Source of the DNA: Mizuhopecten yessoensis
Taxonomy: Eukaryota
Assembly (NCBI RefSeq): GCF_002113885.1
Contig: NW_018407994.1
Span: 274,690 to 338,689 of the forward strand
Reading direction: 5' to 3'
DNA: 64,000 nt
The notes below the pieces were generated by a model that was not told where the DNA came from, did no database searches, and was given only the letters and a program-made list of their open reading frames with translations. The translations under genes were made by a program, and so were the position numbers. Below are positions 12,501 to 55,582 of the stretch, in pieces; position 1 is the first letter of the stretch, and the number at the start of each line of letters is the position of its first letter.

Positions 12501-15500
12501 TCCTATTTCAAAATTTCAAATTAATGTATAGTTGAATGGAGACAATAAATTTAGAAATTAAAAAATGTATGAAGAATAAAAACAGGAACACACACAAAAT
12601 TGGCAAATGTAGATGATACAGTATAAGATATCACTGGGTAAAATGGTGTGAGCAAAGGGCAATAACTCTGTATATGGAAAACAATGTTGAAATTGTAGGT
12701 TGCAGAGTTCCAGGCATAGGGATGCACACTCTAAAGGACAGCCTGATAGACAGAGATTGCAGTAGATAGTTTATGGACCAAAAATACCTGGCTTACTTAT
12801 TCTGTACTATTTTTAATCAGCTAGTACTGGTACTGGTAACAAGAAAAAGACATTTTTCTTCTTATCTTGTCTGGAGAATTCCATCTTTGCATATTGCAGA
12901 GTTATCTTCTCTTGTGAGCAGGTATTGATTGTTATGTCATTGGTTTGTGCGAGAAAATTACGTCGCTTTTTCTCAAAAATTGATGACGTAACTCTCACAA
13001 ACATGTGACGTAACAATCAATACCTGCTAACAAGAGAAGATAACTCTGCAATACGAAAAGACGGAATTGTTACAGAAAAATACTTAATGTTAATGGTTTG
13101 ACGCTAAAAAACCTTCTGTTAATAACTGATAGGAATTGTTTTCCATAATATAAAGGGCTGCATATATACTGGTGAAATATTTTGCACTACACCTATAGGC
13201 ACTAGAAAAAGTCTTTATTCTAATGGGAAGGTTTTTAATTTTCAACTAGAAACAAAACGCACCAGGAAAAGCCAATAATCTATTTTAATCGAATTATTTT
13301 CTTAGAAACAAACAAAATGCTGATGTTGCATATTAGATGATTTGTAAAAATATGTACATGAATATATATACTATATAAAGTATTATATATATGTGTGTAA
13401 TAATGAAAATATGATATAAAAGAATATATATATAAAGATATTTTTCCACAAAACATGCTATTGTATATATATGGTGAGAATATTAGGAGAAAAGAGACAA
13501 TTATAAATTTGGGGTGTGTGATGGGTGTCTATCATTAATATTAGTGCCAGTTTAAAAAGGTTATCAAATATCAGGAAAAAGTGTGATCACTGCATCGAAG
13601 TTCAAACCACTGTTAGGTTATTTGGGAAACAAAATATGTGATAACTCAACTCTTTTTAATTCTAATATATAAATATGTAACTTACTTAATACAAAAATCA
13701 TTCATTCATTAATTAATTAATTAAGAATCACATTCAATACATCATTAAATATTGGAAATTATTCAAAAGCTATGTTTTTAAATTTGCAACCTCTGTAATG
13801 ATAAGCCTTATACATGTATATACCATGCTGTTCGAGTCATACTCAGCATATATATATGCAAGGAGTTACCAGAGATCCGTTAATTCAATAGAGAACAATT
13901 CCCACATACTGGTATCTACTAGCTAATATTATGTATTAACTAGCTTTGCTCTTCTTCACTATTTCGTGTTTGGAAATTCGGCATATTCGTAAATAGTAAT
14001 CTGTTTCAGTTATTTCCACACTCCAGGTACAGTAGAAAGATTTTACGAGCCTGTTACAGTATTGATTTTTCTCTCTCTCCCGATATCGCCTATAAACATT
14101 CCGGCACATGCAACATGCCTTGTTTGTGTTATGTATCTCTAACAATAAAACTAAACAAAAAGATATTTAAAGCGAAATGTTGTAACTGTTTGATCGTACA
14201 TAATTTTACAGACTATACTAACACAGTTGTTTATAAAATCACATTCATAGGTTAAGTAGTCATGCTATTTCTGTACAAGTGCTTGAAATTCTCACCCTGT
14301 TCAGTTTGCCCCGTTTAGGATCTGCCATGTTTTCTTCCCTTTCGGAGGGCCAAGTTTCGTTTGCAAAGTCAAGCAAATTAGGTCGCCCTGCAGGCTGGAC
14401 AGTGTCCGAATCTGATCCAGAGGTCACTGTCCACTTCTTGAGTGTTGGCTCACTTTCCGATGTCTCCTGTTAACACAAAGTCAAGGTTACATAAAGGTCA
14501 ATCAAGATTATTACTTTCCCTACCATAGAAATATAGAAAACGGCCAAGGTCAGTCTATATCACTGTGAGAGAGTGGAACTCCAATAGGCCGAAAAATAAA
14601 AAAATACTTGTACTTCCCGTGAAAACTATGAGGTCAGTCTACATCACAGAGAGTGGAACCCCAATAGGCCGAAAGTTAAAAGATACTTGTACTTCCCGTG
14701 AAAACTATGAAAAAAGTTACAAGGTATAACACAGTGAAGCACTGATCTAAATATTAATGTTCCGTATTCAATTGTCATCACTTGCTTACTGTCAATGGCT
14801 AAATGTTTCCATTTCTTAATAATTCCTTTATGCATTTTCCTCAATACATTATCAAACAATACATGTCCATGTCAACTTAGATATTACCATTCATTTATAA
14901 AGCCATCATTTCTCTAGGCAAATGGTCTGGCAGTATAATCATTGTACAAGAATTTACTGTATATGTAGACAAACATTATTTTTTCAAAACATCTTTTTTT
15001 CATTTGTTATATGGAGTACATTACAGTACAGTATATATACATACTCTGTCTTTTGAATTTCTTGTTCAAAATTGGCGTAAAATTTTACAAGTAACACATT
15101 TAAATGTAGTGTAGGTAGATTTACCCAGAAAAAGGGATCTTTAGTAATTATAAGCCATCAATCTGACTCTGATGGTGTGCTAATCTACCTATACGATTCC
15201 AGATATACTTGTTCAGTGAAAATCTTGTTTCATCTATTTGGAAAGTTTCACCCAAATTTGTCTGGAATAATGAGGTTCCACCACACATGTAACGAGTGAA
15301 ATGAAGGTCAAGTATATTCTGCAACATTTCTCACATACAGGTAAATTGACTTATTGATTAATGTTACTGAGGTCAAATCAAACATTAACACAATTAAATG
15401 CATTAAAAATATTTAAATCCGCGGAAAACATTATATATTTATACCCGAATTAAATTGTATTTTTCATAATTTCAGAGAATTCAATACATTCCAATTAATT

Positions 15501-18500: not shown

Positions 18501-21500
18501 CCGAGCTTCCCTTTACCTTAAAGGTTTAACACAAGTTGTCCCCAAGGCCAGGACTCAAACCTGAGATTACCTTGACCTTAGAGGTTCAACACAAGTTGTC
18601 CCTAAGGCCAGGACTCAAACCTGAGCTTCCCTTTACCTTAGAGGTTCAACACAAGTTGTCCCCAAGGCCAGGACTCAAACCTGAGATTACCTTGACCTTA
18701 AAGGTTCACCACAAGTTGTCCCCAAGACCAGGATTCAAGCCTGAGCTTCCCTTTACCTTAGAGGTTAACCACAAGTTGTCCCCAAGGCTAGGACTCAAAC
18801 CTGAGCTTACCTTTACCTTAAAGATTCAACACAAGTTGTTTCCGAGGCATTTATAGGACTCAAACCTGAGATTACCTTTAGCTTAGAGGTCCAACAAAAG
18901 TCGTCCCCAAGGCCAGGATTCAAGCCTGAGCTTACCTTTACCTTAGAGGTTCAACACAAGTTGTCCCAAAGGCCAGGACTCAAACCTGAGCTTACCTTTA
19001 CCTTAGAGGTTCAACACAAGTTGTCCCTAAGGCCAGGACTCAAACCTGAGATTACCTTGACCTTAAAGGTTCACCACAAGTTGTCCCCAAGGCCAGGACT
19101 CAACCCCGAGCTTTCCTTTACCTTAGAGGTTAAACACAAGTTGTCCCCAAGGCCAGGACTCAAACCTGAGCTTACCTTTACCTTAGAGGTTAAACACAAG
19201 TTGTCCCCAAGACCAGGATTCAAGCCTGAGCTTCCCTTTACATTAGAGGTTAAACACAAGTTGTCCCCAAGGCCAGGATTCAAGCCTGAGCTTACCTTTA
19301 CCTTAGAGGTTAAACACAAGTTGTCCCCAAGACCAGGATTCAAGCTTGAGCTTTCCTTTACCTTAGAGGTTAAACACAAGTTGACCCCAAGGCCAGGACG
19401 AGGTTCAACATAAGTTGTCCCTAAGGCCAGGACTCAAACTTGAGCTTACCTTTACCTTAAAGGTTCAACACAAGTTGTTCCAGAGGCATTTATAGGACTC
19501 AAACCTGAGATTACCTTGACCTTAGAGGTCCAACAAAAGTTGTCCCCAAGGCCAGGACTCAAACCCGAGCTTACTTTGACCTTAGAGGTCCAACACAAGT
19601 TTTCCCAGAAGCCTGGCATCAAACCTAAGCTTACCTTGACCTAAGAGGTCTGTCCCCGAGTCCAGGACTCAAACTTGAGCTTATAATTACTCGACTTTAA
19701 AGAGCCAACACAAGCTGTCCACCTTGACCTAATTAGAGGTCCAACACAAGCTGTCTCAAGGCCAGGACTCAAACCCGAGGTTTCCATGACCTTAGAGATC
19801 CAACACAAATTGTCCCTGAGACCAGCTAGGAGTCAAATCTAAGCTTACATTTTTTTTGAGGGAGACAAAATTAGGGAGGGGGCTTAATTGCAAGCACCCA
19901 CCCGGTTCCCAGGCCGGACATTTGCCAAAGTGGGGAGGGGGCTTATTTGTGAGAGGGGGCTTATTTGCGGTCAAATATGGTAACTTGAACTCATTGAGAT
20001 TCATTAGAATTCTGTCAAACCCTCTAGACCTCATGATGAGACAAATAAAATGCTGAATGACATTGCAACGTTATAGTTCTATATTTACAGGCAATGGTAT
20101 GATTTTTAGGGATTATAAAATTACTATTATGACAGAAACAACACTATAATTTTGATAAATTGTACCTATGTGTGACAGCTAGTACTCAGTCAATATACAT
20201 CAATGTCTCCACATATACAATAAATGGAATCTATCCATCGTGAGAGAGGTTAGTAGGAAACATGTAGTAATCTACAAAATCCACACAATTAAGATGACAA
20301 CTGATAGAAATAACCTGCCATCTCCAATATCTTTAACCCTTTCATCCCTATGTTACTTTAGTAGACTCTACCATGCATTGATATGGTTGTGTCCATTATG
20401 GTCTACAGTGGTGACAGGGTTAATTAACCTCATGATCATACAATGTTTATAATTAAAGCTCTATATCTATATATAAATATAAACACTGGAGGATCTCACA
20501 TGTTCCCCATTTTTATAAGATGTTTATGAAACCAGCTTCAGAGAGCTTCATAAAACTCAGATTGTATGGAAATAAGGTTTGATTAAAAGTTTTGATTTCT
20601 CATAAAACCAGTGATATGATTATAAAATAAATATACTGATCACTGTGTTGCTTACATGTATTCAGTTTGAAATTGATATATTTATGGTAATCCTGATGAG
20701 CTGAAAACCCTGAAAATTTCATTAAAATAAAATATTGTGTAAACGAGACTCAAACCTGTCCTGAAGAATTCACAGAGTCAGTAAAGACACACAAAATCAC
20801 TAAAGACTCCAACTCACAGAGTGACAGACACACATATGCTGTATTGTGTGTGGGAATTCAAGATTAAATATAAACAAGTCTACGTCATTATGAGACATGT
20901 GTTCCAGGGGGATGATTGAGTTATACATCAGTTATCAGACCCCTGTATTTACATCAGGTCTCTCGTCTCACAAAGTCTGGTTAGTTTTTAAATGTGGTAC
21001 AATCTTGGCTTCAAGCAAACAAGACTTTTTGATGCAGAACCTGGTTGGGTCATATAACAAATGCCTGCCACAGAAACCTACTAATCCCTCTTTTAGTCAC
21101 CAAAATAAAGTCTAAAAACCCTGTCAACAGTCCCTGCAGCCAATGAACCCCTCAAGGTCACTGGAGCCTACAAACTGTCACTTTAGTCTATACCCTTCCA
21201 TTTTCATGGGAGTCTATAAATTCTTCTGCTCTCCTTCACCCAGGAGTCTAAACCCTTGTGTTGTCACTGGAACATACATAGCCCTCTGTTGTCACTTTCT
21301 TGTCACAGACAGCTGGGTTATGTAAAAGTTATGCAGACTATTATAAAACTATTCAGATTAAACTAATAATCAATCTTTTGAGTTTTATCTTTGTTTACAG
21401 AAAAGAGAACTAATTAAGTCTGATGCAGACATCAAACATACACGTCTACATTAGATAAATATTCTACAGATCACAACCTTGAAATGTTTACCCCATCTTA

Positions 21501-24500
21501 GTTTTTAATGAATCATATCTAAGCTTGATGTGTCTGGTATGAAGATGTGATATACACTATTGGGAACTCCACATGCTTCATGTATCAAATTATAATTTAA
21601 AGTGCTGACAGACCTCCCAGTCTAGTCCCCGTATCTGTCTCGAGATTTAGGACCCAGAGCACCTGTGGGGATTGATTACTGGGTCTAACTGGGACTAATT
21701 GGACTGGATAGGAGCACAGCAAGAGGATAACTGGGGCACCACTCCCTGTACTGGAGGAGACTTGGTAAGGCGGCCACATCTCCAATAGGACTCCGGAAAA
21801 GAATGGGTAACATGGATATCTATCCATTGCACCTTTGGAAGAGGATGATGCATCACAGTTCATCCTTGAAGCAGGCGGGATAATAGAAACTCTCCAGTAG
21901 GACTTAATTGAAGCAGACAGATGACGGGACATCTCTAGTTGATCAGGGAACCTGAGCTCTCCAATAGAACATTAGAGTAGACAGGAAAACAGGAATATCT
22001 TTCCAGTGGGACTAAATTGCAGACAGCATTCAATGTACACCTCAATTTTAAAACTAATCGTGCATGACTGTTTTATCTTTTATATCATTACAAAACCTTT
22101 AGTGGAAATTCTGTTAACTACAACTCTTTCATTTTCTGACTATCATTACAGGCCCCTATGGTCAGGAAACCGTCTTTAGTTCACATTTCAAATTTTAACA
22201 AGATAAATATTTCTCTTTAAAACCATCTTGAAATGGTGAAAAAGTCCATATTGACAATAAACATGTACATGCATGTAAAAACACATTTTGACATGGAACT
22301 TAAAAATTGCATAACATTCAAGTTTGAACTTAATTATTTTTTGCACGATCCTCTGGGCTTGCATATGGGTCGACATGAGTAATATCATCTTTACAAATAG
22401 AAGCCAATTCAATGTTTGTTTTTGCAGAACATGCGTAAGTTATTCATAGAATTACCTCACCACTATAATGAGACTTACTGACAATAAGAAAGTCTAAGAG
22501 TCCAATTTCTACCAGGGAGTAAGATCAGTTTGTACGAGATTATACAGACATCTGTAACCATCCCCATGGTCTAGTAGTGATCGGACCCACCTTCTCTATT
22601 ATGTCGCAACACTTTAATACCGACTTGTCAAAACAAATAGAGCATTTGTCACGGGACCGGAGCTGTGGTGTAACAAGGCTACACGAGGTGAAGGATGAGT
22701 CACGGAGCATCTCTGATCGCGCTGTCAACCTGTTCCTATACCTATCGCCACGGTGACACACTCCATCACCCAATCAGGTGTGTCGACAGATAATTAGGCC
22801 CACCTTACCTGTGATCATGGGTCGTAAACACTTAAACAGTACAAAGGTGTTACTGGACACAGGGGCTGTGACCAGACAGGGCATTAATTACATCGGGAGC
22901 TATATGACAAGACAGTGTACCTTGACCTTGTATTACATCAGTGTGCGTCAATCTCTATTTCTTAAATCATTTTTCATGAAAAAAAATCAACCGCAATAAA
23001 AACAAAAAATACAGACAGAAAACAACATCAATCTACATCGTAATTAATAATGACCCTATCATGTGAACGGCTGTTAACTAAATGACATGTGACAGACAGA
23101 GTCACGAAGCCGAAGGTGCAAACAATGTTGAAATATTGAAGTTAAACGTTACAGCTCCTGCGTCACGCGCGATCCATTTTACGCCATATATCATTAATAT
23201 CCTGGCAACATTTGTACATTTTTAACACTTGATTTTCTGTGTATTTAGAAGGTATCTTAGATGAACAGAATACCACTACACAACAAGTGTTTTAACCCTT
23301 TCACCCCTATGTAACTTCAGTAAACTCTTCCATACATTGATTTGGATGAGTCCATTATGGTCTACAGTGGTGAAAGGGTTGATAGAGTATTACATTGCAA
23401 TCTCTAACAATATGTGTCAAAGACTAATTTCTTGTAAATTCATGTCCTTTCCCTAACTTTCTTTGACCTCAAAAAGAAACACCCATCTAATATTTTTTTG
23501 TAAACCTATCGACAGCAACCTTTAAATTCATCAGGATCCTCCCCAACTTTCTTTAGTTACACTGGGATAAATACTCAGATTATGGCAGGTACATGTAGTA
23601 CTTAGTTAACAAGAGACCCTTAGGCATATACGGGAATTGTTGAAAACTTGGGCTACAACAAACTGTTTTGGGGGTTTCTTAGACTTTTTATGAAGAATTT
23701 CTCAGCTGCATTTTACTACTAGTTTATCTCCCCCTAGTTTAGAATCTAGAATCAGACATCCAAGTGATCAATTTTTTTTGAGTTAAACTTTTTTCTTAAT
23801 AATTCAATATTCTAGAGACGGTGGCCAGTTTTGGGGGGTTCTGGGAACAGTGCTTCTCCTGCAGCACCATCTGGAGTCCTGGGACTATAACAGGAATAGC
23901 TTATAATTTTGCAACCTGGTATTCTTGCCTATAGACCTTTCTATATGGATCAGGTCGTTAAATCACAGTTGTCCTTCAGCAGAAAATATTTTCATTTTGT
24001 ATAAAACTTGCCCTTGTTTAATTGGCCCTGCCTAGCTATCTGTCTCCCTGCTGACGGGCTGGAGACCTTAATACAACTGGTAATGGCCTTATTTTAAAGA
24101 TGACTAAAATGAATAAGTTTGATTAAAATACGTCATTTAAATGTGGTAGAAGGAACCATTTATGTCATTTTCCTTTATAACAATTCCTTGCGTATTGCAG
24201 AGTTATCTGCTCTTGTGAGCAGGTATTGATTGTTTCGTCATTTGTTTGTGAGAGTAACGTCGTCAATTTTTGAGAAAACGACGTAATTTTCTCACCCAAA
24301 CCAATGACGTAACAATCAATACCTGCTCACAAGAGAAGATAACTCTGGAATACACAAAAACGGAATAGTAAATTAGGGGTCGTGGAATGGTATGAACAGA
24401 TTTAACTTTTCATGGATTGATCTTTCTGCAATGAAAAAGAAACAGATTCAGGATGTTTGATTCTGTAGAAGAAATTTCTTTGAAAATGTATCATTTGGCT

Positions 24501-27500
24501 CTAAATCTTGGCGCTACAGGGCTAAAGTCCACATTCAGGCACCTTTGGATCCCTACAGTTCCTCCATTTATCATTCCTACAGAATTGGATACAATGTGGT
24601 TGAGTGCTTTAAAGGAAGTTGAAAATGTAAAATGTTAATGGACGACAGACAAAAATATGATGGACAAAAGACAAAGATGAATCACAATCGGTCACCGAGC
24701 CTTGATCTATGGTAACCTAAAAGCATGTATTGATCTCCTCCTGTCTGTTAATTCTATAAAACCCTTTATTTTAGTATTATGTAATAGAAATAACCTGATA
24801 CATGTACATGTAATGTCAAAAGATCAAATTTCATCAAAGTTATACAGGAATAGAAAATATCAAGATTACAGATAAAGGCTGAAAGTGGGAGACAAATGTT
24901 TTAACCCATAACCCTTAAAGTCACATTTGAACCTTACCAAATCAAAGACCGGGCAAGTCCAGTTTGAATATAAAGGGTGAATGAGTTAAGAATGGATGCA
25001 GTATATATATCTTTATCAAGTTTTACAATTCAAGCTTGATAACATATATGTGTAGTTATACTGATGGAAATCTTGAAAGCTAGTTTGAGATGAACGAAGC
25101 AAAAGGCGGGTTATGCCGACTGCACTGAGTAACATTTCCCCCATATACATAAAAGTTGAGCACTCCAGACTTAACCAATCAATACGGTACATCCTCTCGC
25201 AAATCTACTTATCAAGGATCAAAGCCATGCAAAGTGAGGTCTTTCTGCATTCATCCTTGCATAAGACCGTGTAGTGTATTATGTTTATCCCTATTTGGCT
25301 GTTAGCTAAATATCCGTGGCGACAAATTCTCTTTCTTTTCTCGCAAAATTCAGTTATATTGGTTGGATGTTCTTTCTGCAAATTGTTCGGGCCTTTTATG
25401 TTTTTAGATATTTCCAGATGATTTCCAGACAACTGTAAAATACCAGAATACTGCATTTATGTATCGAAATCCATAAATACATGTATAAGAAATAATCTGC
25501 ACATGTTATGGAAAGGCCGGATTCAAAAAGGGTGTGCAATTTTTATTTCTTTAATTTCCCAACATTTTCAAACTCCTAGTTATATATTCCACCATAATAT
25601 ACAAACACGGTTTGATTAAATTTCTTCTATCACACTAAATGTACACATGAAATGTTACGAACTGCATTTTTACCTGACTAATCAAATATAAGGTAGCATA
25701 ACAAAGAGAATTGTAGGGAAGATTTTGAAATGCTGATTGACCATGCATGCATTGTTCGGGCACATGTTGCATCTGTTGTCTAATAATCCATGGTATTCGA
25801 CCAACGAATATTTTACTGGTAACAAAAAACACAACTTTAGTTTCATTCAGCCTAACCCAGACAGAGCTACAGCTTTTGGATGGGTTACAGATAGCTAACA
25901 TACAAGGTTATCGTAAAAGTGACACTGGGGATACATAACATTTTAAAATGTCAGAAACATTGCCTCTAGTTAGACTTCAGTTTTCCTGAGGGTATTACAG
26001 CTCATAAAACTAAGACATTTTTTATGTGAAAAGTGAAAACTTCATAAAAAATAAAATGAATTTATAACATTCCAGTGAAAATATAACAATTTAAGTAAAT
26101 CTATATACTAGCCCCTGTTCATGAACAATATTCCCAAGAAAGTTATGAAAAAATAAATCTCAAAGGATTTTTTTTCCAAACCCCAGCAAAAACTTTCTAT
26201 GGAAACAATTTGATGTACTTTTTCAATATTTGCTTAGGAACTTATATTATGTGAAACATGTGCCCGAAAGGCATGTATGCAATCCACATGGTTAAACTTT
26301 GACATTATAAAAAACACAACCAATGTACTTTAACTTTCACTGTAAGATGGCAAGACTTAAACAAACTGACCATCGGGTCCGGATGCTGACTAATTGGCTA
26401 CCTGGTCAATACATACCTGTCTATACCTGTATTTTCCACAGCAACAGGAACACTTTTTGGACACTTTGTTACCCATAGTTTCGTGAGAAATGTTCCGAAA
26501 TCAAGACTCATTTCACCAAACAACCTCTTCACATCGAGGGAAAAAAACTTACAACTTTGCCAAATTTTCGATGTGTGTAGTGTATATATGTGTAACCTGC
26601 TATGGAATGCAGTAATCCAGTAAAAATCTGCCAAACACTCTCTGTTGAAGGGATAAAGTTTCATTCTCAGGCTGAGTCAAATTTCAGCTGTTTTGGATCC
26701 CTTTCACCCAACACTTCCTTACCAAAAGCCCAGTGTCTTTGATGCTCTGTATCATAGCACTATGTAGAAGGGTGTCTACACTTCACCACTTAAAAGCATC
26801 AACAGCTTCCAGCTACATTCAACAAGAAGATAAACAATTCGGGTTGTCTCAAAACTGTTTTGAATAAATCACCACCAACATCAACAATTTTGTAAACAAC
26901 TTAAGAAATTGCGTAACATGTGTATGTAAAAAAAATAATCAAAAAATAACAGAACAATTTAAATATTTGTTTAAATCAACTTGTACACTGGTCAGAAGCT
27001 AAAAGTACTCATGAAATCATGAGATTAGTAGGGGGTGGGGTGAGGGGGGAAGGGAGGTAATGATACACACATGTAGGGATAACCTCATACATCATACGCT
27101 AATTGGCACTCTCAGCCATTATATTATCACAACATGGGTATCACAGTGCTGCAGATCTGTTTGTTTTGTCATTGCTGGCGCCATAACATTTAATCTGACC
27201 GCCCTAATAGTAAACAATATCTGGGGTCCACTTCTCAGTTCTAACTGCACTGCTGGAGGAACTGATTGATAAGACGGAGTTTATTTTAATGGTTTAGATC
27301 CCCTGTATTATGACACATTCATAGACGCATCAAAGTTGTATATTTATATAGGGGTTAATGAGCAGTAGATTCTCTTGTGGACTGTTAATGAAATAAGTCA
27401 TTTCTCACTTTCAAACAAATTCTTTTGGGACTAATTAAGTACAACCAAGACATTTCAGTCAGGGCAATTAACTGGCATATGGCCACTACAAATCAGAATC

Positions 27501-30500
27501 ACTGAGTCATTGGTTGTCAGAATTCCTACATTTGTTCTAAAACAAGCACTCCTCTCATTTATAATAATAGTTGGTATCATTTCTTTAAGATTTAGAAACT
27601 CATACTTATGTTATTTGAGTTAGAGTGACTTCCATTAAGGATCTATGCTACCTTACCTTACGCTATGCTACCTTTTTCCCGTGATTTGTGTTAGAGTCAT
27701 CTGCCATTAAAATATATACCTTAGACATTATACATAGACTGGCTATAGCTACCATCCCCCAAGTTTTTATGAAGAATTTCTCAGCTGCATTTTACTACTA
27801 GCTTATCTCCCCCTAGTTTAGAACTTAGGGTCTGGTCAAATCTGGAAAAGCACTCCCCGTAATAGTGGAGAGTGCAGAAAGGTCAAGAAAATATAGCATT
27901 ACTGAGATCATTCTGATTCTAGAATCAGACATCAAAGTGATCAAAAAGTTTTGAGTTAAACTTTTTTCTAAATAATTAAATATTCTAGAGATGGTGGCCA
28001 GTCTACATTATACACTGCGACTCCAATTTGTGTTAGAGTGACTTCCCTTAAGGATATATGCTACCTCACACATTATTCCTGTAATTTGTGTTAAGAGTGA
28101 CTTCCTTTAAGGATATATGCTACCTTACACATTATTCCTGAGATTTGTGTTAGAGTGACTTCCCTTAAGGATATATGCTACCTCACACATTATTCCTGTA
28201 ATTTGTGTTAAGAGTGGCTTCCCTTAAGGATATATGCTACCTTAAACATTATTCCTGAGATTTGTGTTAGAGTGACTTCCCTTAAGGATATATGCTACTT
28301 TACACATTATTCCTGTAATTTGTGTTAAGAGTGACTTCCCTTAAGGATATATGCTACCTTACACATTATTCCTGAGATTTGTGTTAGAGTGACTTCCCTT
28401 AAGGATATATGCTACCTCACGCATTATTCCTGTAACTTGTGTTAAGAGTCATCTCCTATTAAAATATAAACGTTAGACATTATACACTGCGACTCCAATT
28501 TGTGTTAGAGTGACTTCCCTTAAGGATATATGCTACCTCACGCATTATTCCTGTGGTTTGTGTTAAGAGTCATACCATTACAATATATACCTTAGACATT
28601 ATACATTATTCCTGTGGTTTGTGTTAGTCTAGCATCCCTTATATATGTGCCACCTTTAACCTTCTTCTCTTGATTCATTTATCATCATCACCATAAAGTT
28701 AAATTGGTATTATCTAACAATTTATAATCAACACTGTCTAAAACTGTATAATAAGCCTTATCTAATCAGTTTAATAACCACCTGTTATCAAGGCATGCAC
28801 CTTTAACTGTGTCATCAACCAATCAACCCAGCCGTGTAATTACCATTTGTAAAAGATTTATAATGAGAGTTCCTCAACTGTAGTTGGCTGTAGAAGTTGG
28901 GGACATTTGATTCCGATTTCTGTTTCCTTTTATAGTCTATGCTCCTGATGAGTATGTCCCATAATCTGATCACAAACTTCGGGAAAAAATCCTCAGCTAA
29001 CTGCAAGAGTTTGATTCTTTCCAAAAACACCCAGCAAACTCAGACTTTCCCAAGAACATAATTTAACCCTGTTTCCCTACTTTTCCCGAAGGGGTGAAAT
29101 GTGGCATTTCAAATTTGAGTCTTTAATGATTTAAGTCGGCAGGTTTATCGATCCCTATTTCCTCGGCTAGCCATGAGACAAAGAACAAGACAACATGACA
29201 CACCATACCACCATTGATACGGAAGGCCGTCTGTTTTGTGGTTTTTACCTAAATATTATTTCTGGTGCAATAAATTTACGCTAGAATCAGCTTTGCTGGT
29301 GATGTAAAGGCCACTGGCATTGATTATCGAAGTCTTGAGTCATAATCCCACACAATATTGTGGTATGTACTGTTCCCTACATCACAATAGATGACAGAGG
29401 TGTCTGCTCAATCAATATTGGTTTAAAGATCCACAAAATTGTGAATGTTTATATCTACTCAATATAAACAAAGTTTGTGAATGAAAAGTAATCTGCTCAA
29501 TAGATGAGCAAACACAATGCACCCATTCACCCCTAAAGTCACAGTTCAACCTAACCAAATCAATGAATGGGCAAGTCCAGTTTAAATATGTAGGGGTCAA
29601 TGAGTTTATTATGAGTGTCTGTTCAGTGAAAGTGTACATAGTGGGGTTTTCTGTTCGATTCATTGTAGACAAGAGCTGTCTTAACCCATCTTCACCTGAA
29701 GACACATTTGAACTCTTCTGATTCAAAGGTTTGAATAGTCCATAATGAAATTTCAGGGGTGAATGAGTGAATATATTGGAAAACTGGTACATTTGTATAT
29801 CACAATACACAGGCATATCATATCACAATACAGAAAGAGAATACTGCTGTATCACAATATTTTTCACAAACTTATGTTTATGTTTAACATTGTACTTGTC
29901 AAGCAGCAAAATCTCATCCCAGTATCAATTAAAGTAGCGAGTTCCAGTTCTGTGTTGTACCTCCAATGAGAAGAGTTCCAATTGATCTGCTTTTTATCAT
30001 TCATGATATTTGTTACATTAACACTTTTTAGAGGCACAACTGAGACTGATTTCAAAACGTTTTAAATCCCTTAAAATGCCTGCAACTTAAAATTTTCTTT
30101 GTATAAAGTTACACACAAGTTAAACAGGAATGTATACGGTAATACTTATCAAATACTTATCACATTAGATATATAAGATTCTGTAGAATGAAAAAATGAT
30201 TTGTATGGGAAGAAACAGCTGTGACTCGAGGTTTATTGAAATTTACATTATGTTATGACATTTATGATATATATTGTAAGGTTAAAGTTTTTTCTTGTGT
30301 TAGAAAGTTTCTTCAGTATTGTTGACTCATTTACCCCTGAAAATACATTTGATTTCTTCCAATTCAAAGGTTGGAATATAGTGCATCATGAAACTTCAGG
30401 GGTGAATGAGTATGAATAAATTCACAACTACACTAATTTTTCTGGCTGTGAAAACTATTTATGATTTTCTCATGTGTCACTATAGCCTCTTATAACATTA

Positions 30501-42900: not shown

Positions 42901-44021
42901 TTGGCTTTGTCAGAAATATATATGGAATGACAGGACATTTCCACAATAAACATTAATAGTTAAACGAACAGGTGGTAAGTTCAACACAATCCTGTTTGTG
43001 CATAATAGGAATAATAATAACCTTAATGTCTAACATTGCTGTTGACATATAGCTATAGGTGCATTATGTAGATGACTACCTGTCTGCATGGTTATGGCGA
43101 AATAGCACATAAAAAGCCATTTACCTGTCACACACGCACGGGCTCATATATATACACCACTGCTAACCTGTGCACATAATTGTCACATCTTAGATCACCC
43201 TTTACAATCAACAAAGCAGGGCCGCATAATGACACAAGACGGACTCAGTACAAGACATAAAACTTCTAAGCTTTACATTACAGCTAGTACACATATTATA
43301 TATTTCTGTTTACAAGGAAAATATAAGAAGCAAACAGTTACACAGAGCACATAATGCTTTAACCAAAGGATAGGCTAGGTAAGAAGCTACATGTATCTAT
43401 AAAAAAACCATCCAATTGCTGGACTGTGTAAAGGAGAAACCTACCACCACATAAAATAAATCAATAAAACAAAGAGGTTACAACACGAAACAACATCCAT
43501 GTCCAACAACATCTTACTAGATAGCCCAAGCCACAGTGCGAACGACAGAGGGTGTGAAATGCACATGCGTTGTGTAGGAATACCTGTGTGGGCTTGAGTG
43601 GTGATGTGGGAGCTAGGGGATCAAACAGGAGTGCATCCTCGTCGCTGAGGGAACCCACGCTGGATTTAGACTGGCGCGACGGTGTCAAGTCTATCTGACC
43701 AGGTATAACGTCCAGTGGTTGCCAGGGAGATGTGGGCGTTATGGCTGATTTACCAGTGGTCAGAGTATTAGATCCCTGATCAGCGACATCGTCCATTTTG
43801 AACAGACAGAAATCACCATCCTTTGAGAATTCCTTCTGTTCACTATCGTCAGTGGATGACTCTGTAGTTGGGGCACCAAAATCTAACAGCAGAGAATTAG
43901 ATGTATTCGATACTCCGGGTCTATTTACCACCTGAATCGCACCTGCTGAGCTCTGATTAGCAGCAGCTGGACCAAAGTCTAAATCCAGTAAGTCATCAAT
44001 AGATGATGTTGATGATGTCAT
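461..44021 (-). CDS. Large disordered TNKS1BP1/KIAA1671-like protein, 3'-partial: complement(join(461..551,2280..2458,3070..3297,3737..4853,5518..5666,5879..6026,6894..6941,9812..10177,12011..12112,14296..14466,43584..44021))
   Basis: Eleven exons, each bounded by AG/GT, join in one open frame (~1010 aa). The segment LDFNDVG-DTSHLD...FQDTTE...PSS..EEE...LPGL resembles the recalled TNKS1BP1 C-terminal DFSFIEDTEILD...FQDSTE...PSSDEE...FPGL. The gene model is solid; the family call is moderate. Confidence 0.85.
944..2054. mobile_element. Non-autonomous TIR DNA transposon with a nested, 3'-truncated HINE (~1125-1770)
   Basis: ta|CCGTAAAGCAGGATATTTCCACGG at the left matches the reverse complement of CCGCGTAAATAACCTGCTATACGG at the right; internal ACAAGAGGCCC...GTCACCTG HINE start. 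Confidence 0.7.
2280..2458 (-). CDS. Minus-strand gene exon (GTKDQYVPSWLK...IPQWKRDLAERRKLRKENSVDTP)
   Basis: aaatag / gtacat, phase 1-0. Confidence 0.9.
2508..2599. mobile_element. TTAA-flanked 91-bp MITE, subfamily A (others at 29681-29771, 30322-30414, 36479-36569, 63225-63315)
   Basis: TTAA-CTCATTCACCCCTG...CAGGGGTGAATGAG-TTAA. Confidence 0.88.
3070..3297 (-). CDS. Minus-strand gene exon (NQSKTPGDGKPQWTDMPRLRKTPNG...RERTPVS)
   Basis: tttaaag acceptor (an in-frame CAG alternative would start the exon at 3276), gtaagt donor, phase 1-1. Confidence 0.85.
3737..4853 (-). CDS. Minus-strand gene 1117-nt exon with FxxPxL[KR] repeats
   Basis: gtacag / gtgaga, phase 0-1; lies within the 395-aa ORF. 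Confidence 0.93.
5518..5666 (-). CDS. Minus-strand gene exon (TKQSPSSE...MMPLPGLGQ)
   Basis: ttccag / gtgggt, phase 1-0. Confidence 0.9.
5879..6026 (-). CDS. Minus-strand gene exon (DTSHLDVNIGKQKTSLRKKGSLARRRKPTR...FQDTT)
   Basis: ctgtag / gtgggt, phase 0-1; core of the TNKS1BP1-C-like segment. Confidence 0.9.
6894..6941 (-). CDS. Minus-strand gene exon (NSKLKREASLDFNDVG)
   Basis: ttttag / gtaaat, 16 codons. Confidence 0.82.
7146..7506 (-). mobile_element. tRNA-derived SINE (Meta-core-like)
   Basis: A/B-box-like head; TGTTGTATCTTTGAGCAAGATACTTTAC core; CTCCCCAGGGAG; (TTA)n tail; second copy at ~40400. Confidence 0.85.
8014..8872 (+). mobile_element. Non-autonomous Helentron-associated (HINE/pearl-like) element
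   Basis: AACAAGAGGCCC start; GCTCACCTG/CAGGTGAGC subterminal inverted repeats; internal ~305-bp repeats with TGACCTTGA; GGAC microsatellite; 3' hairpin plus A-run. Confidence 0.85.
9812..10177 (-). CDS. Minus-strand gene acidic exon (ITDASFNAMAAQSKK...MDDSTTE)
   Basis: tgacag / gtgagt, 122 codons. Confidence 0.9.
12011..12112 (-). CDS. Minus-strand gene exon (TMERSFEDLLAGLEEDDLDADIDDILTTGSLSPQ)
   Basis: caccag / gtttgt, 34 codons, phase 0-0. Confidence 0.85.
12877..13068. mobile_element. ~190-bp palindromic MITE
   Basis: ~60-bp TIRs (TATTGCAGAGTTATCTTCTCTTGTGAGCAGGTATTGATTGTTA); second copy at 24182. Confidence 0.88.
14296..14466 (-). CDS. Minus-strand gene exon (ETSESEPTLKKW...NLLDF...MADPKRGKLNR)
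   Basis: taacag / gtgaga, 57 codons, phase 0-0. Confidence 0.85.
14547..14711. repeat. ~83-bp tandem duplication
   Basis: AGGTCAGTCTA...CCAATAGGCCGAAA...CCCGTGAAAACTATGA occurs twice. Confidence 0.85.
16645..16780. repeat. 30-bp tandem repeat, ~4.5 copies
   Basis: ATTCAAATGTGTCATCAATTCTTGTGTACT. Confidence 0.9.
17800..19850. repeat. 60-bp satellite array, ~33 copies
   Basis: CAACACAAGTTGTCCCCAAGGCCAGGACTCAAACCTGAGCTTACCTTTACCTTAGAGGTT; copies line up in 60-column register. Confidence 0.97.
20333..20423. mobile_element. TTAA-flanked 91-bp MITE, subfamily B (others at 2851-2941, 10476-10566, 23292-23382, 31772-31862)
   Basis: TTAA-CCCTTTCA...TGAAAGGG-TTAA; piggyBac-like ends. Confidence 0.88.
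24182..24367. mobile_element. ~186-bp palindromic MITE, opposite orientation
   Basis: Same TIRs as 12877-13068. Confidence 0.88.
24901..24989. mobile_element. TTAA-flanked ~91-bp MITE, subfamily C (others at 29518-29608 and partial 52562-52635)
   Basis: Same termini; different spacer sequences. Confidence 0.82.
26417..26476 (-). CDS. Candidate alternative first coding exon MGNKVSKKCSCCCGKYRYRQ
   Basis: aaactATGG Kozak context, 20 codons, CAG/GTATGT phase-0 donor compatible with the exon at 14466; myristoylation consensus plus Cys cluster. Confidence 0.68.
28020..28630. repeat. 57/58-bp minisatellite, ~10 copies, alternating dimer; related degenerate units at ~27610-27740
   Basis: ATTTGTGTTA(A)GAGTGACTTCCCTTAAGGATATATGCTACCT[CT]ACACATTATTCCTG[TA/AG]. 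Confidence 0.95.
32543..32744. repeat. 100-bp tandem duplication
   Basis: GTCAGGCCTTAATTAAC...CCCAGCAATGTC occurs twice, nearly identical. Confidence 0.93.
35550..36210. repeat. ~117-bp tandem repeat, ~6 copies
   Basis: GACAGGTGATCTTTATAAAGAGGTTCAAATTC recurs at ~35588, 35710, 35827, 35944, 36061 and 36178. Confidence 0.93.
36950..36971. repeat. (TG)n microsatellite preceded by (TA)n
   Basis: Directly visible. Confidence 0.9.
37681..38715 (+). mobile_element. HINE-like element with ~150-bp internal tandem units; contains the assembly gap
   Basis: Same termini as 8014-8872; GGACGC repeats; TGGCAC-TTC-GTGCCA hairpin. Confidence 0.85.
38073..38196. other. Assembly gap (124 N)
   Basis: Run of n. 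Confidence 0.99.
40400..40940 (-). mobile_element. Same tRNA-SINE (40400-40752) plus two tandem extra copies of its head
   Basis: Homologous to 7146-7506; B box GGTTCGAGTC; head repeated with ~92-bp period. Confidence 0.85.
41016..41750. repeat. 52-bp minisatellite, ~14 copies
   Basis: ATTCATTCATTTCGACAGTATCTCCCTAGGTACTCATCCTATTATTGAGCGT. Confidence 0.96.
42064..42300. repeat. ~18-20-bp minisatellite TTCCATGTCC[TA]TATTATA
   Basis: About 12 tandem copies, followed by inverted ACATGGAA copies at 42315-42450. Confidence 0.92.
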
Positions 44022-47000: not shown

Positions 47001-49095
47001 ATTTCACTAGTTTTAAGACTATATTAGAAGTAATTGATATATTTTTTTTCAATTCATTACATAATAAAGACGGAGCAATTGATTATCAAGTTATTTATGG
47101 ACAGACATACATGTGCATCTCCTGTGACTTACCTGACAAAGCTTGGTTACGACAACAGGGCTATCATTCTTGTTCAGCTTGTATATCCAATCAAATCATC
47201 TGTGGAATATAGAAAAAAGTCCTATATATATATATATAGTACAGCACACACATTGTGGAAGTCAAATGTTCTTGTGAAATACGAAACAAGTATAATTATG
47301 ATACTTCAGCAATCACAGAAATCAATTTAATCCTCCTGGATCACGTTGTATAAAGTGTCATTAGCTGAACAGGAGGTTAATGTTATCATTTGTTTAAAAC
47401 TAAAGTTGTTTGGAGATAAGACAATCACCTGAAGACAAGAAATAATTGATGGTAAATTTTTAGATATATTCCTAAAAAATAACCCCTCCGATGTCACATT
47501 AGACTATGAACAACTGTGCCTGCTCTTAGGATTCTAATGAATATGAGGTTAAGAGATTCAAGCAAGTTGATTACACACATCAGTCGTGTATTGTTTACGC
47601 AGAAAAGTGGCGAGTTGGTGTGTATAAACATGGACTTCAGTGATCGATAGCTTGTATTTGTAGTAATAGTTATAGAAATCAAGTAGATTTCAAGAATATT
47701 TACAGTCAATTTACCCACAGCAAAAACATTTTCATCAATTCTGCCCAAAGTTTTTATATCTTTTTCATAACAAACCCTACAGCAACATCAGATTAACAGC
47801 ACAATACTAATTTATTAAGTTTGAGTTACATTGATTATCCTACTACTGAGAAGGTTTAGTTCCATATATTTGAAATTGAAAAAATCCAGATAATATAAGG
47901 TCATTCTAAATATACAATAAAGTAATTTATAATGAGGTTAAAACATATCACCTCTGCTTTTTTAAATAAAACTGCCCTCTCCCCGTCCCCCCTCCCTACC
48001 CCACGATTTCAGTATATACTTTTTGTATCATAGGCCAATGTAAATAAACGTTATCATTTTATCACAGGTCCGATCCTAAGTGTATCACTCGTGGACTTTC
48101 TAAAGTAAACACTGGATATTATCTACAAAGTAACACATCGACAGCAGGTTAGCTTGAAGGACACTGAGTGTTACAACCTGCTCAAGTTGACTAATAGCTA
48201 CCAGAGTATGTTAAGGGCTTGTATCTTTCTAAGTTTAACCTTAGCTTGACGAAATTACAATCTGCTCCTTCTCGATGCACACCTGCACCATGCATACACA
48301 CTCAAATACACCAGAAATACTCTAAGGCCGGTCCATTTGTTTTTTAGGTGTTTGAAAGACGTCTATATATATCTGATACAGAGAATCAAGAAAGCATTAA
48401 ACTGCAATCTTACTAGAAGATCATGTCATAATAACCCAATAAATCACATGTTATATTGACTTTGCAGTGATTTGCTTTGCTCAGTTTCTCAGCCAAAAAT
48501 ACAGGCTGTTTCCCCTCACTAAAAAAAGTGCCTTATTTTCCTAAAATGACCCAAATGAAGAATATATTCCCAATTTTTCAATTAAGATAATGTTATGTTT
48601 TCCCATTAATAAAGAAACAAGCTGTGGTTAAATTTAGGTAAAAATACAGTTCATGCCAGCCAGGTCTTGTTCAACTTCTAATGCTGTGCATTTGACGAAA
48701 GAGAAAAGTAAATACCATATTTTTTTTAAAGATATATATATAAGATAAGATATATATTTCAGTGTTTTAAGAAACACTCTGGCACGCAATGGAAAATATA
48801 ACAACTTTTAAAAAGTATTTACCCGGTAATCATTTGAAATGCTCATCTCAACGAACAATCTGAGCACTATATATTTGAATGGTCATATTTATGATGAATT
48901 TCCCAATCACTGAATTTTGTATAGTTGAACAAGAACGAAATTGCAATCTTCCATCTGAAATATACATGAAAACTGAAGAAAGCAGAATATCATAAAATAA
49001 ACACAAATTTCAATTACAGTGACCTCTTTTGTAATTATACACAGTTGTTCGTTGAATTTTTTTTTCATTTAAAAGAAAATGAAATTAGAATAAGC

Positions 49096-50692
49096 TCAGG
49101 ACCCGCTGGAAACGCCACAGGAAGGTAAAAATGTAAACTCAAATCCCAGCCAATGGCCTGCCAGGGACACCACAAGAAGGTAAGGTAAAAATGTAAACTC
49201 TAATCCCAGCCAATGGCCTGCCAGGGACACTACTGGAAGGTAAGGTAAAAATGTAAACTCTATTCCCAACCAATGGCCTGCCAGGGACGCCACAGGAAGG
49301 TAAAAATGAAAACTCTTTTCCCAGCCAATGGCCTGCCAGGGACGCCACAGGAAGGTCAAAATGATAACTCTATTCCCAACCAATAGCCTGCCAGGGACGC
49401 CACAGGAAGGTAAAAATCTAAACTCTAATCCCAGCCAATGGCCTGCCAGGGACACCCCAGGAAGGTAAAAATGTAAACTCTATTTCCAGCCAATGGCCTG
49501 ACAGGGACACCACAGGAAGGTAAAAAAGACAACCCTATTCCCAGCCAATGGCCTGCCAGGGACCCCACAGGAAGGTAAAAATGTAAACTCAAATCCCAGC
49601 CAATGGCCTGCCAGGGACACTACTGGAAGGTAAGGAAAAAATGTAAACTCTAATCCCAGCCAATGGCATGACAGGGACACCACAGGAAGGGAAAAATGTA
49701 AACTCTAATCCCAGCCAATGGCATGACAGGGACACCACAGGAAGGTAAAAAAGACAACCCTATTCCCAGCCAATGGCCTGCCAGGGACGCCACAGGAAGG
49801 TAAAAATCTAAACTCTAATCCCAGCCAATGGCCTGACAGGGACACCACAGGAAGGTAAAAATGAAACCTCTATTCCCAGCCAATGGCCTGCCAGGGCCAC
49901 CACAAGAAGGTAAGGTAAAAATGTAAACTCTATTCCCAACCAATGGCCTGCCAGGGACGCCACAGGAAGGTAAAAATGTAAACTCAAATCCCAGCCAATG
50001 GCCTGCCAGGGACACCACAGGAAGGTAAAAATGTAAACTCTATTCCCAGCCAATGGCATGACAGGGACACCACAGGAAGGTAAAAATGAAAACTCTATTC
50101 CCAGCCAATGGCCTGCCAGGGACCCCACAGGAAGGTAAAAATGAAAACTCTAATCCCAGCCAATGGCCTGCCAGGGACACCCCAGGAAGGTAAAAATGTA
50201 AACTCTATTTCCAGCCAATGGCCTGCCAGGGACACCACAGGAAGGTAAAAATGTAAACTCTAATCCCAGCCAATGGCATGACAGGGACACCACAGGAAGG
50301 TAAAAATGTAAACTCTAATCCCAGCCAAGGGCCTGCCAGGGACACCACAGGAAGGTAAAAATGAAAACTCTATTCCCAGCCAATGGCCTGACAGGGACAC
50401 CACAGGAAGATAAAAATGTAAACTCTAATCCCAGACAATGGACGGTCAGGAACGCCACAGGAAGGTAAAAATGTAAACTCTATTTCCAGCCAATGGCCTG
50501 ACAGGGACACCACAGGAAGGTAAAAATGTAAACTCTATTCCCAGCCAATGGCCTGACAGGGACACCACAGGAAGGTAAAAATGTAAACTCTATTTCCAGC
50601 CAATGGCCTGCCAGGGACACCACAGGAAGGTAAAAATGAAAACTCTATTCCCAGCCAATGGCCTGACAGGGACACCACAGGAAGGTAAAATG
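49096..50692. repeat. 55/60-bp satellite array, ~28 copies
   Basis: AAGGTAAAAATGTAAACTCTAATCCCAGCCAATGGCCTGCCAGGGACACCACAGG, with or without a TAAGG insert. Confidence 0.97.
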
Positions 50693-54905: not shown

Positions 54906-54975
54906 CTGGATAACAATAGAGCAGAGTGCATCCAGGTTGTCTCGCTTGCAGGTGACAGAACTGCGACAGGAAGTG
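54906..54975 (-). other. Probable first (5'UTR) exon of the minus-strand gene; TSS approximate
   Basis: Perfect CAG/GTAAGT donor next to the CpG-containing promoter motif cluster. Confidence 0.65.
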
Positions 54976-55560: not shown

Positions 55561-55582
55561 TTTGAGGAAATATTTATCAAAT

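What the first reader, a model, noticed from the sequence alone, without database searches (positions are those of the whole stretch)
26417..26476. Hidden alternative first exon encoding a dual lipid anchor (MGNKVSKKCSCCCGKYRYRQ)
Seen: deep in the 29-kb intron, the minus strand has an ATG in strong Kozak context (A at -3, G at +4), 20 codons and a CAG/GTATGT phase-0 donor that fits the phase-0 exon at 14466. It is missed by the ORF track. Known: M-G-x-x-x-S-K is the N-myristoyltransferase consensus, and an adjacent Cys cluster plus basic residues is a classic palmitoylation and membrane-targeting signal. Inference: promoter choice switches the N-terminus between a clathrin-motif exon (43584-44021) and a lipid anchor, relocating the same C-terminal module.
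Basis: partly seen in the sequence, partly recalled or inferred. Interest (0 to 1): 0.85.

Follow-up and report, generated by a model that had tools for sequence, protein, structure and literature searches.

The report
Conserved lipid-anchor start exon in scallops
A 20-codon exon deep in a scallop gene's intron is real, already in the public annotation and conserved in two other scallop genera; it gives one isoform a start that looks built for fatty-acid anchoring to membranes, a familiar way to relocate a protein.

Summary
On the minus strand, 26476..26417 reads MGNKVSKKCSCCCGKYRYRQ, with A at -3, G at +4 and a CAG|GTATGT donor. The window is Mizuhopecten yessoensis. The exon is not hidden: RefSeq XP_021364944.1 (isoform X4, 933 aa) starts with this 20-mer joined to the exon at 14466. 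New here: the exon lies in the orthologous intron of Pecten maximus (19/20 residues) and Argopecten irradians (18/20), where no such isoform turned up. Nucleotide changes are almost all synonymous (dN/dS 0.01-0.06) and the GT donor is kept. DNA similarity stops at the donor and runs about 345 nt upstream. All residues of the N-myristoylation consensus and three of four cysteines are invariant. No counterpart was found in the fetched loci of four non-scallop bivalves. My RNA look showed low-level coverage of 26310-26739 but no spliced junction. Lipidation and an own promoter remain inferences. The clathrin-motif exon is not a first exon, because non-coding exons lie upstream near 54.9 kb and 47.2 kb. 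Verdict: a real, selected coding exon and a new, untested example of a known kind of N-terminal switch. Interest is modest. The scan noted this same stretch once before (s1-567478), and not on other DNA.

The parts
26417..26476 (-). Coding part of the alternative 5' exon ('exon 1b'): 20 codons, MGNKVSKKCSCCCGKYRYRQ, phase 0
   Evidence: Searches give the sequence; it is identical to the N-terminus of RefSeq XP_021364944.1 (P0018); conserved in Pecten maximus (L003:28318-28377) and Argopecten irradians (L004:20917-20976), with dN/dS 0.01-0.06.
26411..26416 (-). 5' splice site GTATGT after CAG
   Evidence: The GT is kept in all three genera (GTAGGT in Pecten, GTAAGG in Argopecten), and alignable similarity ends here.
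26477..26822 (-). Conserved non-coding block upstream of the ATG: 5' leader and probable promoter. It contains an E-box CAGCTG (26690-26685), TGACTCAGC (26679-26671, AP-1/ARE-like) and upstream ATGs at 26664, 26533 and 26511.
   Evidence: about 80% identity to both other genera, whereas synonymous sites of the adjacent CDS are saturated. RNA-run contigs cover 26310-26728, 26379-26631 and 26445-26739; no Rfam family and no covariation.
14296..14466 (-). Common exon 2 (57 codons, phase 0 at both ends), the acceptor for both coding 5' exons. It contains the internal Met used by isoform X5.
   Evidence: One search gives the sequence; all isoforms continue with ETSESEPTLKKW...; the same junction is present in the Pecten protein.
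43584..44021 (-). Alternative coding exon 'exon 1a' (146 codons), with LLDLD and LLLDF clathrin-box-like motifs. It is not a first exon: an acceptor lies about 22 nt upstream of the ATG.
   Evidence: it forms the N-terminus of isoforms X1-X3; the motifs are kept in Argopecten.
54906..54957 (-). Upstream non-coding exon 0 (3' part), with donor CAG|GTAAGT. It marks the distal promoter, next to divergent SSRP1.
   Evidence: the 5' end of an Argopecten RNA contig (L002) matches here at 88%. One search shows the donor; the block 55044-54854 is 86% conserved.
47132..47199 (-). Non-coding exon 0b, flanked by cacag| and |GTAAGT
   Evidence: L002 positions 50-121 match at 71%. One search shows the splice sites. 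In Argopecten it is spliced directly to exon 2.

Best explanation
This is a genuine alternative 5' coding exon of a scallop gene that encodes a roughly 1000-residue, largely disordered protein. That protein carries acidic stretches, about 11 F-x-x-P-x-L-[KR] repeats and C-terminal P-x-W-[KL]-K motifs. When the exon is used, it is spliced in phase 0 to common exon 2. This replaces the 146-residue clathrin-box N-terminus with a 20-residue peptide. After removal of the initiator Met, the peptide is predicted to be N-myristoylated on Gly2, because Asn3, Ser6 and Lys7 fit the NMT consensus. It is then predicted to be S-palmitoylated on the adjacent cysteines (Cys9, 12 and 13, plus Cys11 in two genera), helped by flanking Lys/Arg residues. 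The result would be a membrane-tethered isoform of the same downstream scaffold. What is shown: the exon sequence, its use in the RefSeq isoform, its conservation, and purifying selection on the peptide and on the upstream block. What is inferred: lipidation, membrane targeting, and transcription from an internal promoter lying in the conserved block at about 26477-26822.
For: The sequence and its context are as described, and the site is very unlikely by chance. RefSeq XP_021364944.1 (P0018, 933 aa) starts with the 20-mer joined to exon 2; 1059 - 146 + 20 = 933. The orthologous introns hold MGNKVSKKCSCCCGKHRYRQ in Pecten and MGNKFSKKCSSCCGKYRYRQ in Argopecten, each with a GT donor and A at -3. 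Mizuhopecten differs from Pecten by 7 synonymous and 1 non-synonymous codon, and from Argopecten by 8 synonymous and 2 non-synonymous. Of 15 variable columns, 11 are at codon position 3 (P=0.002), and dN/dS is 0.013-0.059. G2, N3, K4, S6, K7, K8, C9, C12 and C13 are invariant. Against Argopecten, this is the best-conserved colinear block of the 29-kb intron (80-82% identity, compared with 72.5% for exon 2 and 74% for exon 1a), and it ends at the donor. It is single-copy. RNA-type runs from several studies hold part of the stretch. In the two such runs laid, the unique intron on either side has no coverage. The general principle, that alternative N-termini carry acylation signals which redirect proteins, is established (PMC13082882 citing BTK-C; PMC3973911 on KChIP isoforms).
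Against: I saw no spliced 26417->14466 junction. The Logan contigs of runs X5 (26310-26728) and X7 (26379-26631) continue colinearly 107 and 38 nt past the donor. A raw RNA-seq run (12.4 M reads sampled) had zero reads on the exon. No short protein fragments carrying the junction are in the protein collection. If transcripts start near 26740, the leader contains three upstream ATGs, and the one at 26664 is conserved and opens an 88-codon overlapping frame in Mizuhopecten, which would depress translation of the MGNK frame. The isoform was not found among Pecten or Argopecten proteins. Lipidation is a prediction from a consensus only. The RNA-seq support behind the RefSeq model could not be inspected.
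Confidence: 0.68

Rival explanations
1. The exon is real and coding, but it is an internal cassette exon. On this reading it is reached by splicing from the distal promoter's non-coding exons (about 54.9 kb and 47.2 kb) rather than being a first exon with its own promoter. The switch would then be by alternative splicing, not promoter choice.
For: The gene has a distal promoter and non-coding exons that can splice straight to exon 2. Two acceptor-like sites upstream of the ATG are conserved in all three genera...cccttcaacag| at 26642 and ...cattccatag| at 26600. Using the 26642 site would also remove the conserved upstream ATG at 26664 from the mRNA.
Against: Contigs in runs X5 and X8 run colinearly through both acceptor candidates and end at 26728 and 26739. 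Conservation extends about 180 nt beyond the better acceptor and includes E-box and AP-1/ARE-like motifs. No contig or loose end marks an acceptor here.
Confidence: 0.3
2. The isoform is made, but the N-terminus is not dually lipidated. For example, it may be myristoylated only, with the basic residues helping, or the Cys cluster may serve another role such as metal binding, a redox function or a degron.
For: There is no strict palmitoylation consensus, and one of the four cysteines is Ser in Argopecten. No experiment exists.
Against: Every NMT-determinant residue is invariant, and three cysteines plus the flanking Lys/Arg are invariant despite saturated synonymous change. Established knowledge is that Cys close to a myristoyl-Gly is the classical substrate context for S-acylation (Src-family SH4 domains, G-alpha subunits, eNOS, AKAP18-alpha).
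Confidence: 0.15
3. The conserved island is mainly a regulatory element, such as an intronic enhancer or promoter giving unspliced low-level RNA. On this reading the 20-codon frame is rarely or never translated, and the RefSeq isoform reflects minor splicing noise.
For: The only RNA I could lay is unspliced across the donor and at depth 2-14. The non-coding part is as conserved as, or more conserved than, the coding part. The leader contains upstream ATGs.
Against: The codon-position pattern of substitution and dN/dS of 0.01-0.06 are specific to a translated frame. The start context, frame, length, phase and GT donor are all kept in three genera, and similarity ends exactly at the donor.
Confidence: 0.07
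4. A chance ORF next to a chance GT.
For: The scan covers very many windows, so rare patterns will turn up.
Against: The expectation is about 0.05 per window before requiring the Kozak context, donor, phase and strand. The site also has independent annotation and cross-genus conservation with a coding signature.
Confidence: 0.01

Closest known systems
RefSeq model XP_021364944.1, 'titin-like isoform X4' of Mizuhopecten yessoensis (automatic Gnomon annotation)
   Same: It is the same exon, the same junction to exon 2 and the same protein.
   Different: The record carries only an automatic, uninformative name. It has no note of a lipidation signal, no functional study and no cross-species comparison. 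The equivalent isoform did not turn up for Pecten maximus or Argopecten irradians in the protein collection.
Dual-acylated N-terminal anchors: Src-family SH4 domains (Lck, Fyn), G-alpha-i/o, eNOS, AKAP18-alpha (from established knowledge)
   Same: Met-Gly start with Ser at position 6 and Lys at positions 7/8, and cysteines within the first 13 residues flanked by basic residues. This is a short autonomous peptide ahead of an unrelated body.
   Different: Here there is a run of three to four cysteines at positions 9-13 rather than Cys3 or Cys3/5. There is no sequence homology to any of these proteins, and acylation is untested.
Alternative N-terminal exons that add or remove an acylation signal: PSD-95 alpha/beta, KChIP isoforms (PMC3973911), BTK-C (cited in PMC13082882), PDE2A isoforms (partly from established knowledge)
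   Same: One gene has mutually exclusive 5' coding exons joined to a common body. One of those exons carries a lipid anchor that changes location.
   Different: The alternative here is a clathrin-box-like N-terminus, and a third class has neither signal. The host protein is an uncharacterised disordered bivalve protein, and the exon was detected only in scallops.
Vertebrate KIAA1671 / TNKS1BP1 (a lead for the host gene only)
   Same: The gene sits next to SSRP1 in the window and in Pecten and Argopecten. That the human genes are neighbours too is from memory. The nearest named Atlas clusters are KIAA1671 homologues, at score 0.80.
   Different: The defining Tankyrase_bdg_C domain is not detected in the protein or anywhere in the genome. 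That search rang in no control genome, so this is weak evidence of absence. An Atlas score of 0.80 is at chance level by the tool's own statement.

Membership tests
N-myristoyltransferase substrates (PROSITE-type consensus G-{EDRKHPFYW}-x(2)-[STAGCN]-{P} after the initiator Met) | Gly at position 2 directly after the initiator Met | tested here: met
   Invariant in the three genera.
N-myristoyltransferase substrates (PROSITE-type consensus G-{EDRKHPFYW}-x(2)-[STAGCN]-{P} after the initiator Met) | Permitted residue at position 3, a small residue (Ser preferred) at position 6, and no Pro at position 7 (Lys is favourable) | tested here: met
   The residues are Asn3, Ser6 and Lys7. A regular-expression scan found that only 2 sites in the window meet the strict form. 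These residues are invariant in the three genera.
N-myristoyltransferase substrates (PROSITE-type consensus G-{EDRKHPFYW}-x(2)-[STAGCN]-{P} after the initiator Met) | Myristate actually attached to Gly2 | not testable with these tools
   This needs metabolic labelling or mass spectrometry.
Dual-acylated (myristoyl + palmitoyl) N-terminal membrane anchors | One or more Cys close to the myristoylated Gly, usually with nearby basic residues | tested here: met
   Cys9, 11, 12 and 13, with Lys4, 7, 8 and 15 and Arg17 and 19. Cys9, 12 and 13 and the basic residues are invariant.
Dual-acylated (myristoyl + palmitoyl) N-terminal membrane anchors | S-acylation and membrane localisation that depend on Gly2 and the Cys residues | not testable with these tools
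   This needs an experiment.
Alternative 5' coding exon of the host gene | Spliced in frame to the common downstream exon in a transcript | tested here: met
   The database protein P0018 (RefSeq) shows the join, and phase 0 holds on both sides. I did not build a joined model myself.
Alternative 5' coding exon of the host gene | Junction seen directly in RNA reads or contigs | tested here: inconclusive
   low-depth contigs run unspliced through the donor, and one raw run has no reads there; no junction-bearing fragments in the protein collection.
Alternative 5' coding exon of the host gene | Coding constraint in relatives | tested here: met
Alternative promoter / true first exon | A transcription start of its own just upstream | tested here: inconclusive
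   A conserved 345-nt upstream block and contig ends at 26728 and 26739 in two studies. Contigs cannot show starts, and conserved acceptor-like sites exist.
KIAA1671 / TNKS1BP1 family (host gene) | Tankyrase_bdg_C domain (PF15327) | tested here: not met
   No hit at E<=1 in P0018, P0033 or P0027. No hit in the whole genome, although the control genomes did not ring either.

The most novel reading that the evidence does not exclude
A scallop-lineage innovation. On this reading, a 20-codon lipid-anchor exon arose inside the first long intron of an old bivalve scaffold gene, together with its own deeply conserved intronic promoter carrying E-box and AP-1/ARE-like sites. The gene would then make three N-terminal classes of one disordered protein with possible actin-related repeats: clathrin-box, lipid-anchored and bare. 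Stimulus-dependent promoter use would move the protein to membranes.
Probability: 0.3. Interest if true: 0.45.

Novelty: new member of a known kind. Interest (0 to 1): 0.3.

Why it matters
The result shows that a 60-nt coding exon, invisible to ORF lists, can be validated from sequence alone by cross-genus codon-pattern analysis. It flags an isoform that did not turn up among the Pecten maximus and Argopecten irradians proteins searched. It gives an uncharacterised, fast-evolving bivalve protein a concrete, cheap-to-test cell-biological hypothesis: one gene may produce a membrane-anchored form, a clathrin-motif form and a form with neither signal. The mechanism itself is textbook, so the value lies in annotation and in the hypothesis, not in a new concept.

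Tried and rejected
- **RNA junction.** The 12-kb intron could not be spanned within the 6,000-letter limit.
- **Junction-bearing protein fragments.** A search with P0018:1-110 found nothing.
- **Exact look-up of the unspliced 88-codon frame.** The frame 26664..26401 is not on record.
- **Older bivalves.** tblastn, blastn and motif scans of the fetched loci found no counterpart in Saccostrea echinata, Ruditapes philippinarum, Sinanodonta woodiana or Tegillarca granosa. Short hits such as KKCNCC at L005:6938 and MGGC... at L007:36634 were read and are chance or lie in other frames of coding exons. Flanks were limited to 10 kb, so absence is not proven.
- **Paralogous copies.** There are none in the own genome.
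- **Structured-RNA reading of the conserved leader.** No Rfam family reached threshold (best: mir-84, 19 bits against a 60-bit cut-off, outside the block). The covariation term was unfavourable.
- **Host-gene identity.** Pfam gave nothing for P0018. It gave a sub-threshold Phostensin_N hit on the P-x-W-K motif of the Pecten protein. PF15327 was absent, and a PDB sequence search of the conserved basic segment was empty. The Atlas gave only a 0.80 lead.
- **Left out.** I did not build or search a self-made joined exon model. The joined form used is the database's own record, P0018. The N run at 38073-38196 was left as it is.
Full report
**1. What is in the sequence**

On the minus strand, 26476..26417 reads ATG GGT AAC ... 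CAG and translates to MGNKVSKKCSCCCGKYRYRQ. The start context is gaaACTATGGgt, with A at -3 and G at +4. The last codon is followed by GTATGT.

The exon is 60 nt, so phase 0. The exon at 14466..14296 opens after ...ttaacag and is 171 nt, phase 0 at both ends. The exon at 44021..43584 is 438 nt and also ends in phase 0.

**2. Is it more than chance?**

- In the 29,117-nt intron there are 488 ATG-frame/phase-0-GT combinations. Only three combine a strong start context with a donor matching at least 7 of 9 consensus positions, and this is the only one at 8 of 9.
- An NMT-type start with four or more cysteines in the first 20 residues is expected about 0.05 times per 64 kb on both strands. This comes from 300 order-3 Markov simulations. 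It is the only such site in the window.
- The stretch is single-copy in the 988-Mb assembly, and a degenerate pattern for the peptide finds only this site.

**3. Identity of the locus and existing annotation**

A library-wide HMMER search with the large repeat exon (3666-4850) found a 100%-identical 1052-residue protein. Its cluster members are five RefSeq isoform classes of one Mizuhopecten yessoensis gene:

- X1 to X3 (1059, 1052 and 1025 aa) start with the 146-residue exon at 44021.
- X5 (867 aa, four accessions) starts at an internal Met in exon 2.
- X4 (XP_021364944.1, 933 aa, auto-named 'titin-like') starts with exactly the 20-mer followed by ETSESEPTLKKW..., the exon at 14466. The lengths fit: 1059 - 146 + 20 = 933.

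It is 'hidden' only from an ORF list. NCBI's pipeline normally creates such alternative forms from transcript alignments. That is general knowledge; I could not inspect the record's support. I did not build a joined exon model myself. Wherever a joined form was used, it was the database record P0018.

**4. RNA evidence obtained here**

Eighteen runs from eight studies hold all or part of 26300-26700. Eight RNA-type runs from five studies hold only 37-56% of its sampled words. Four runs were laid on 25000-28999:

- Runs X7 and X8 come from different studies and leave the unique intron on either side uncovered. Each has one contig here: 26379-26631 at depth 2.1, and 26445-26739 at depth 3.4.
- Run X5 is metatranscriptomic and has a background of 3-7 over most of the intron. 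It has a contig at 26310-26728 at depth 13.6.
- The raw RNA-seq run X22 (12.4 M reads sampled) has no reads on the exon.

This points to a discrete, weakly expressed unit with an upstream edge near 26730-26740. However, the X5 and X7 contigs run colinearly 107 and 38 nt past the donor, and no joint or loose end is reported at 26417. I therefore did not see the junction. The intron is too long to span within the permitted stretch, and the depths are very low. This neither confirms nor refutes splicing. Searches for junction-bearing protein fragments and for the unspliced frame were empty.

**5. Conservation, the decisive result**

The orthologous genes of Pecten maximus (L003) and Argopecten irradians (L004) were fetched with their introns. 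Both have SSRP1 as a divergent neighbour. tblastn finds one strong hit in each, on the gene strand, between the clathrin-motif exon and exon 2:

| Species | Locus position | Peptide | Identity to Mizuhopecten |
|---|---|---|---|
| Pecten maximus | L003:28318-28377 | MGNKVSKKCSCCCGKHRYRQ | 19/20 |
| Argopecten irradians | L004:20917-20976 | MGNKFSKKCSSCCGKYRYRQ | 18/20 |

The alignment shows that the ATG, the A at -3, the length, the frame and the GT donor are kept in both. Similarity collapses immediately after the donor.

The substitution pattern is that of a translated frame:

- Mizuhopecten against Pecten: 7 synonymous and 1 non-synonymous codon change.
- Mizuhopecten against Argopecten: 8 synonymous and 2 non-synonymous.
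- Of 15 variable columns, 11 are at codon position 3 (P=0.002).
- dN/dS is 0.013 and 0.059 where it could be computed, with dS above 1.
- G2, N3, K4, S6, K7, K8, C9, C12, C13, G14, K15, R17, R19 and Q20 are invariant.

A blastn of the whole window against both loci shows that, against Argopecten, this is the best-conserved colinear block of the intron. It has 80-82% identity over 26808-26406. Exon 2 has 72.5% and the clathrin-motif exon has 74%.

The searches found no MGNK isoform for Pecten or Argopecten.

In the fetched loci of Saccostrea, Ruditapes, Sinanodonta and Tegillarca I found no counterpart. The flanks were limited, so the exon may be scallop-specific, but absence is not proven. By contrast, a clathrin-box-like N-terminus is present in Sinanodonta and a related one in Ruditapes.

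**6. The upstream block**

About 345 nt upstream of the ATG (26477-26822) are about 80% identical across the three genera, with long invariant runs. These include CAGCTG (26690-26685), TGACTCAGC (26679-26671) and TTACTGGATTACTGCATTCCATAGCA. This stands against saturated synonymous sites next door.

There is no Rfam family and no covariation, so a structured RNA is not indicated. The simplest reading is a promoter plus 5' leader. The motif names (E-box, AP-1/ARE-like) are from general knowledge and untested.

Two caveats apply:

- Conserved acceptor-like sites lie at 26642 and 26600.
- The leader holds upstream ATGs at 26664 (conserved), 26533 and 26511. The 26664 frame is 88 codons in Mizuhopecten but is broken by an 8-nt deletion in Pecten, so it is not a conserved peptide. 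The ATG may simply lie in a conserved binding site upstream of the true start.

**7. Gene architecture**

An Argopecten RNA contig (L002) starts in a non-coding exon that matches window 54957-54906. It continues through a second non-coding exon matching 47199-47132, and then splices directly to exon 2. Both have consensus splice sites in Mizuhopecten.

The clathrin-motif exon has an acceptor about 22 nt upstream of its ATG. It is therefore not a first exon. The distal promoter lies near 55 kb, back to back with SSRP1.

The gene makes three N-terminal classes: clathrin-box, lipid-anchor motif, and neither. Whether the lipid-anchor exon has its own promoter or is a cassette is open. I put it at roughly 60:40 in favour of its own promoter.

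**8. Mechanism**

*Shown:* a selected, annotated alternative N-terminal peptide.

*Inferred from established rules:*

- Co-translational N-myristoylation of Gly2, because Asn3, Ser6 and Lys7 are favourable.
- S-palmitoylation of the neighbouring cysteines, reinforced by basic residues, giving stable membrane attachment of the common body.

That body is disordered. It has acidic stretches, about 11 F-x-x-P-x-L-[KR] repeats that loosely recall the beta-thymosin/WH2 LKKT segment, and C-terminal P-x-W-K motifs. Pfam gives no family for it. There is one sub-threshold Phostensin_N hit, in the Pecten protein.

The KIAA1671/TNKS1BP1 idea from another note of this scan is not supported by the defining domain. 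It rests only on the SSRP1 neighbourhood and a chance-level Atlas score.

**9. Comparison and verdict**

The kind of feature is well known: alternative N-termini that add an acylation signal (KChIP isoforms, PMC3973911; BTK-C as cited in PMC13082882). PSD-95 alpha/beta and AKAP18 are further examples from general knowledge.

This is a new, uncharacterised member of that kind. It is already present as an automatic isoform model in one species and did not turn up among the annotated proteins of two others. It is a sound finding of modest interest.

Noticed in passing
window 54854-55044 and 47132-47199 (minus strand): Two non-coding 5' exons of the same gene, both with consensus GTAAGT donors. 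The first lies about 2.8 kb from the first SSRP1 coding exon on the other strand and has a ttacgtca (CRE-like) motif just upstream. This suggests a bidirectional promoter region shared with SSRP1. In Argopecten these exons splice straight to exon 2, skipping both coding 5' exons.
   Followed up: partly
window 32757-32914 and 22742-22843 (minus strand): Two further blocks of the long intron are colinear and 73-75% conserved with both Pecten and Argopecten. They could be additional non-coding alternative exons (isoform X5 has four accessions) or enhancers.
   Followed up: no
L004:20864-20916 (Argopecten irradians): A tandem duplication of about 35 nt of the leader (…TTCTCACGAAACT) lies immediately upstream of the MGNK start codon. 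It is present only in Argopecten.
   Followed up: no
window 27680-28620: Very high contig depth in all RNA runs (up to about 2500) with many loose ends and internal joints. This is a dispersed, expressed repeat inside the intron, unrelated to the exon.
   Followed up: no
window 18536-19413: A tandem array whose units read as a repeated ...RPGLKPE[LI]TFTLEV[QK]HKLS... frame on the plus strand. It is a satellite-like repeat inside the intron.
   Followed up: no
P0018 residues about 265-320 (window about 5900-6100, minus strand): The segment SHLDV.IGKQKTSLRKKGSLARRRKP.R...EDS.FQD.TE is the best-conserved part of the protein across bivalves from Solemya to scallops. It loosely recalls a capping-protein-interaction motif (from memory). 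A PDB sequence search found nothing.
   Followed up: partly
L003 about 50400-57400 (Pecten maximus): The repeat exon and the two exons after it match two places about 4-5 kb apart. This is an internal duplication (or an assembly duplication) in the Pecten locus, and it explains its longer 1259-residue model.
   Followed up: no
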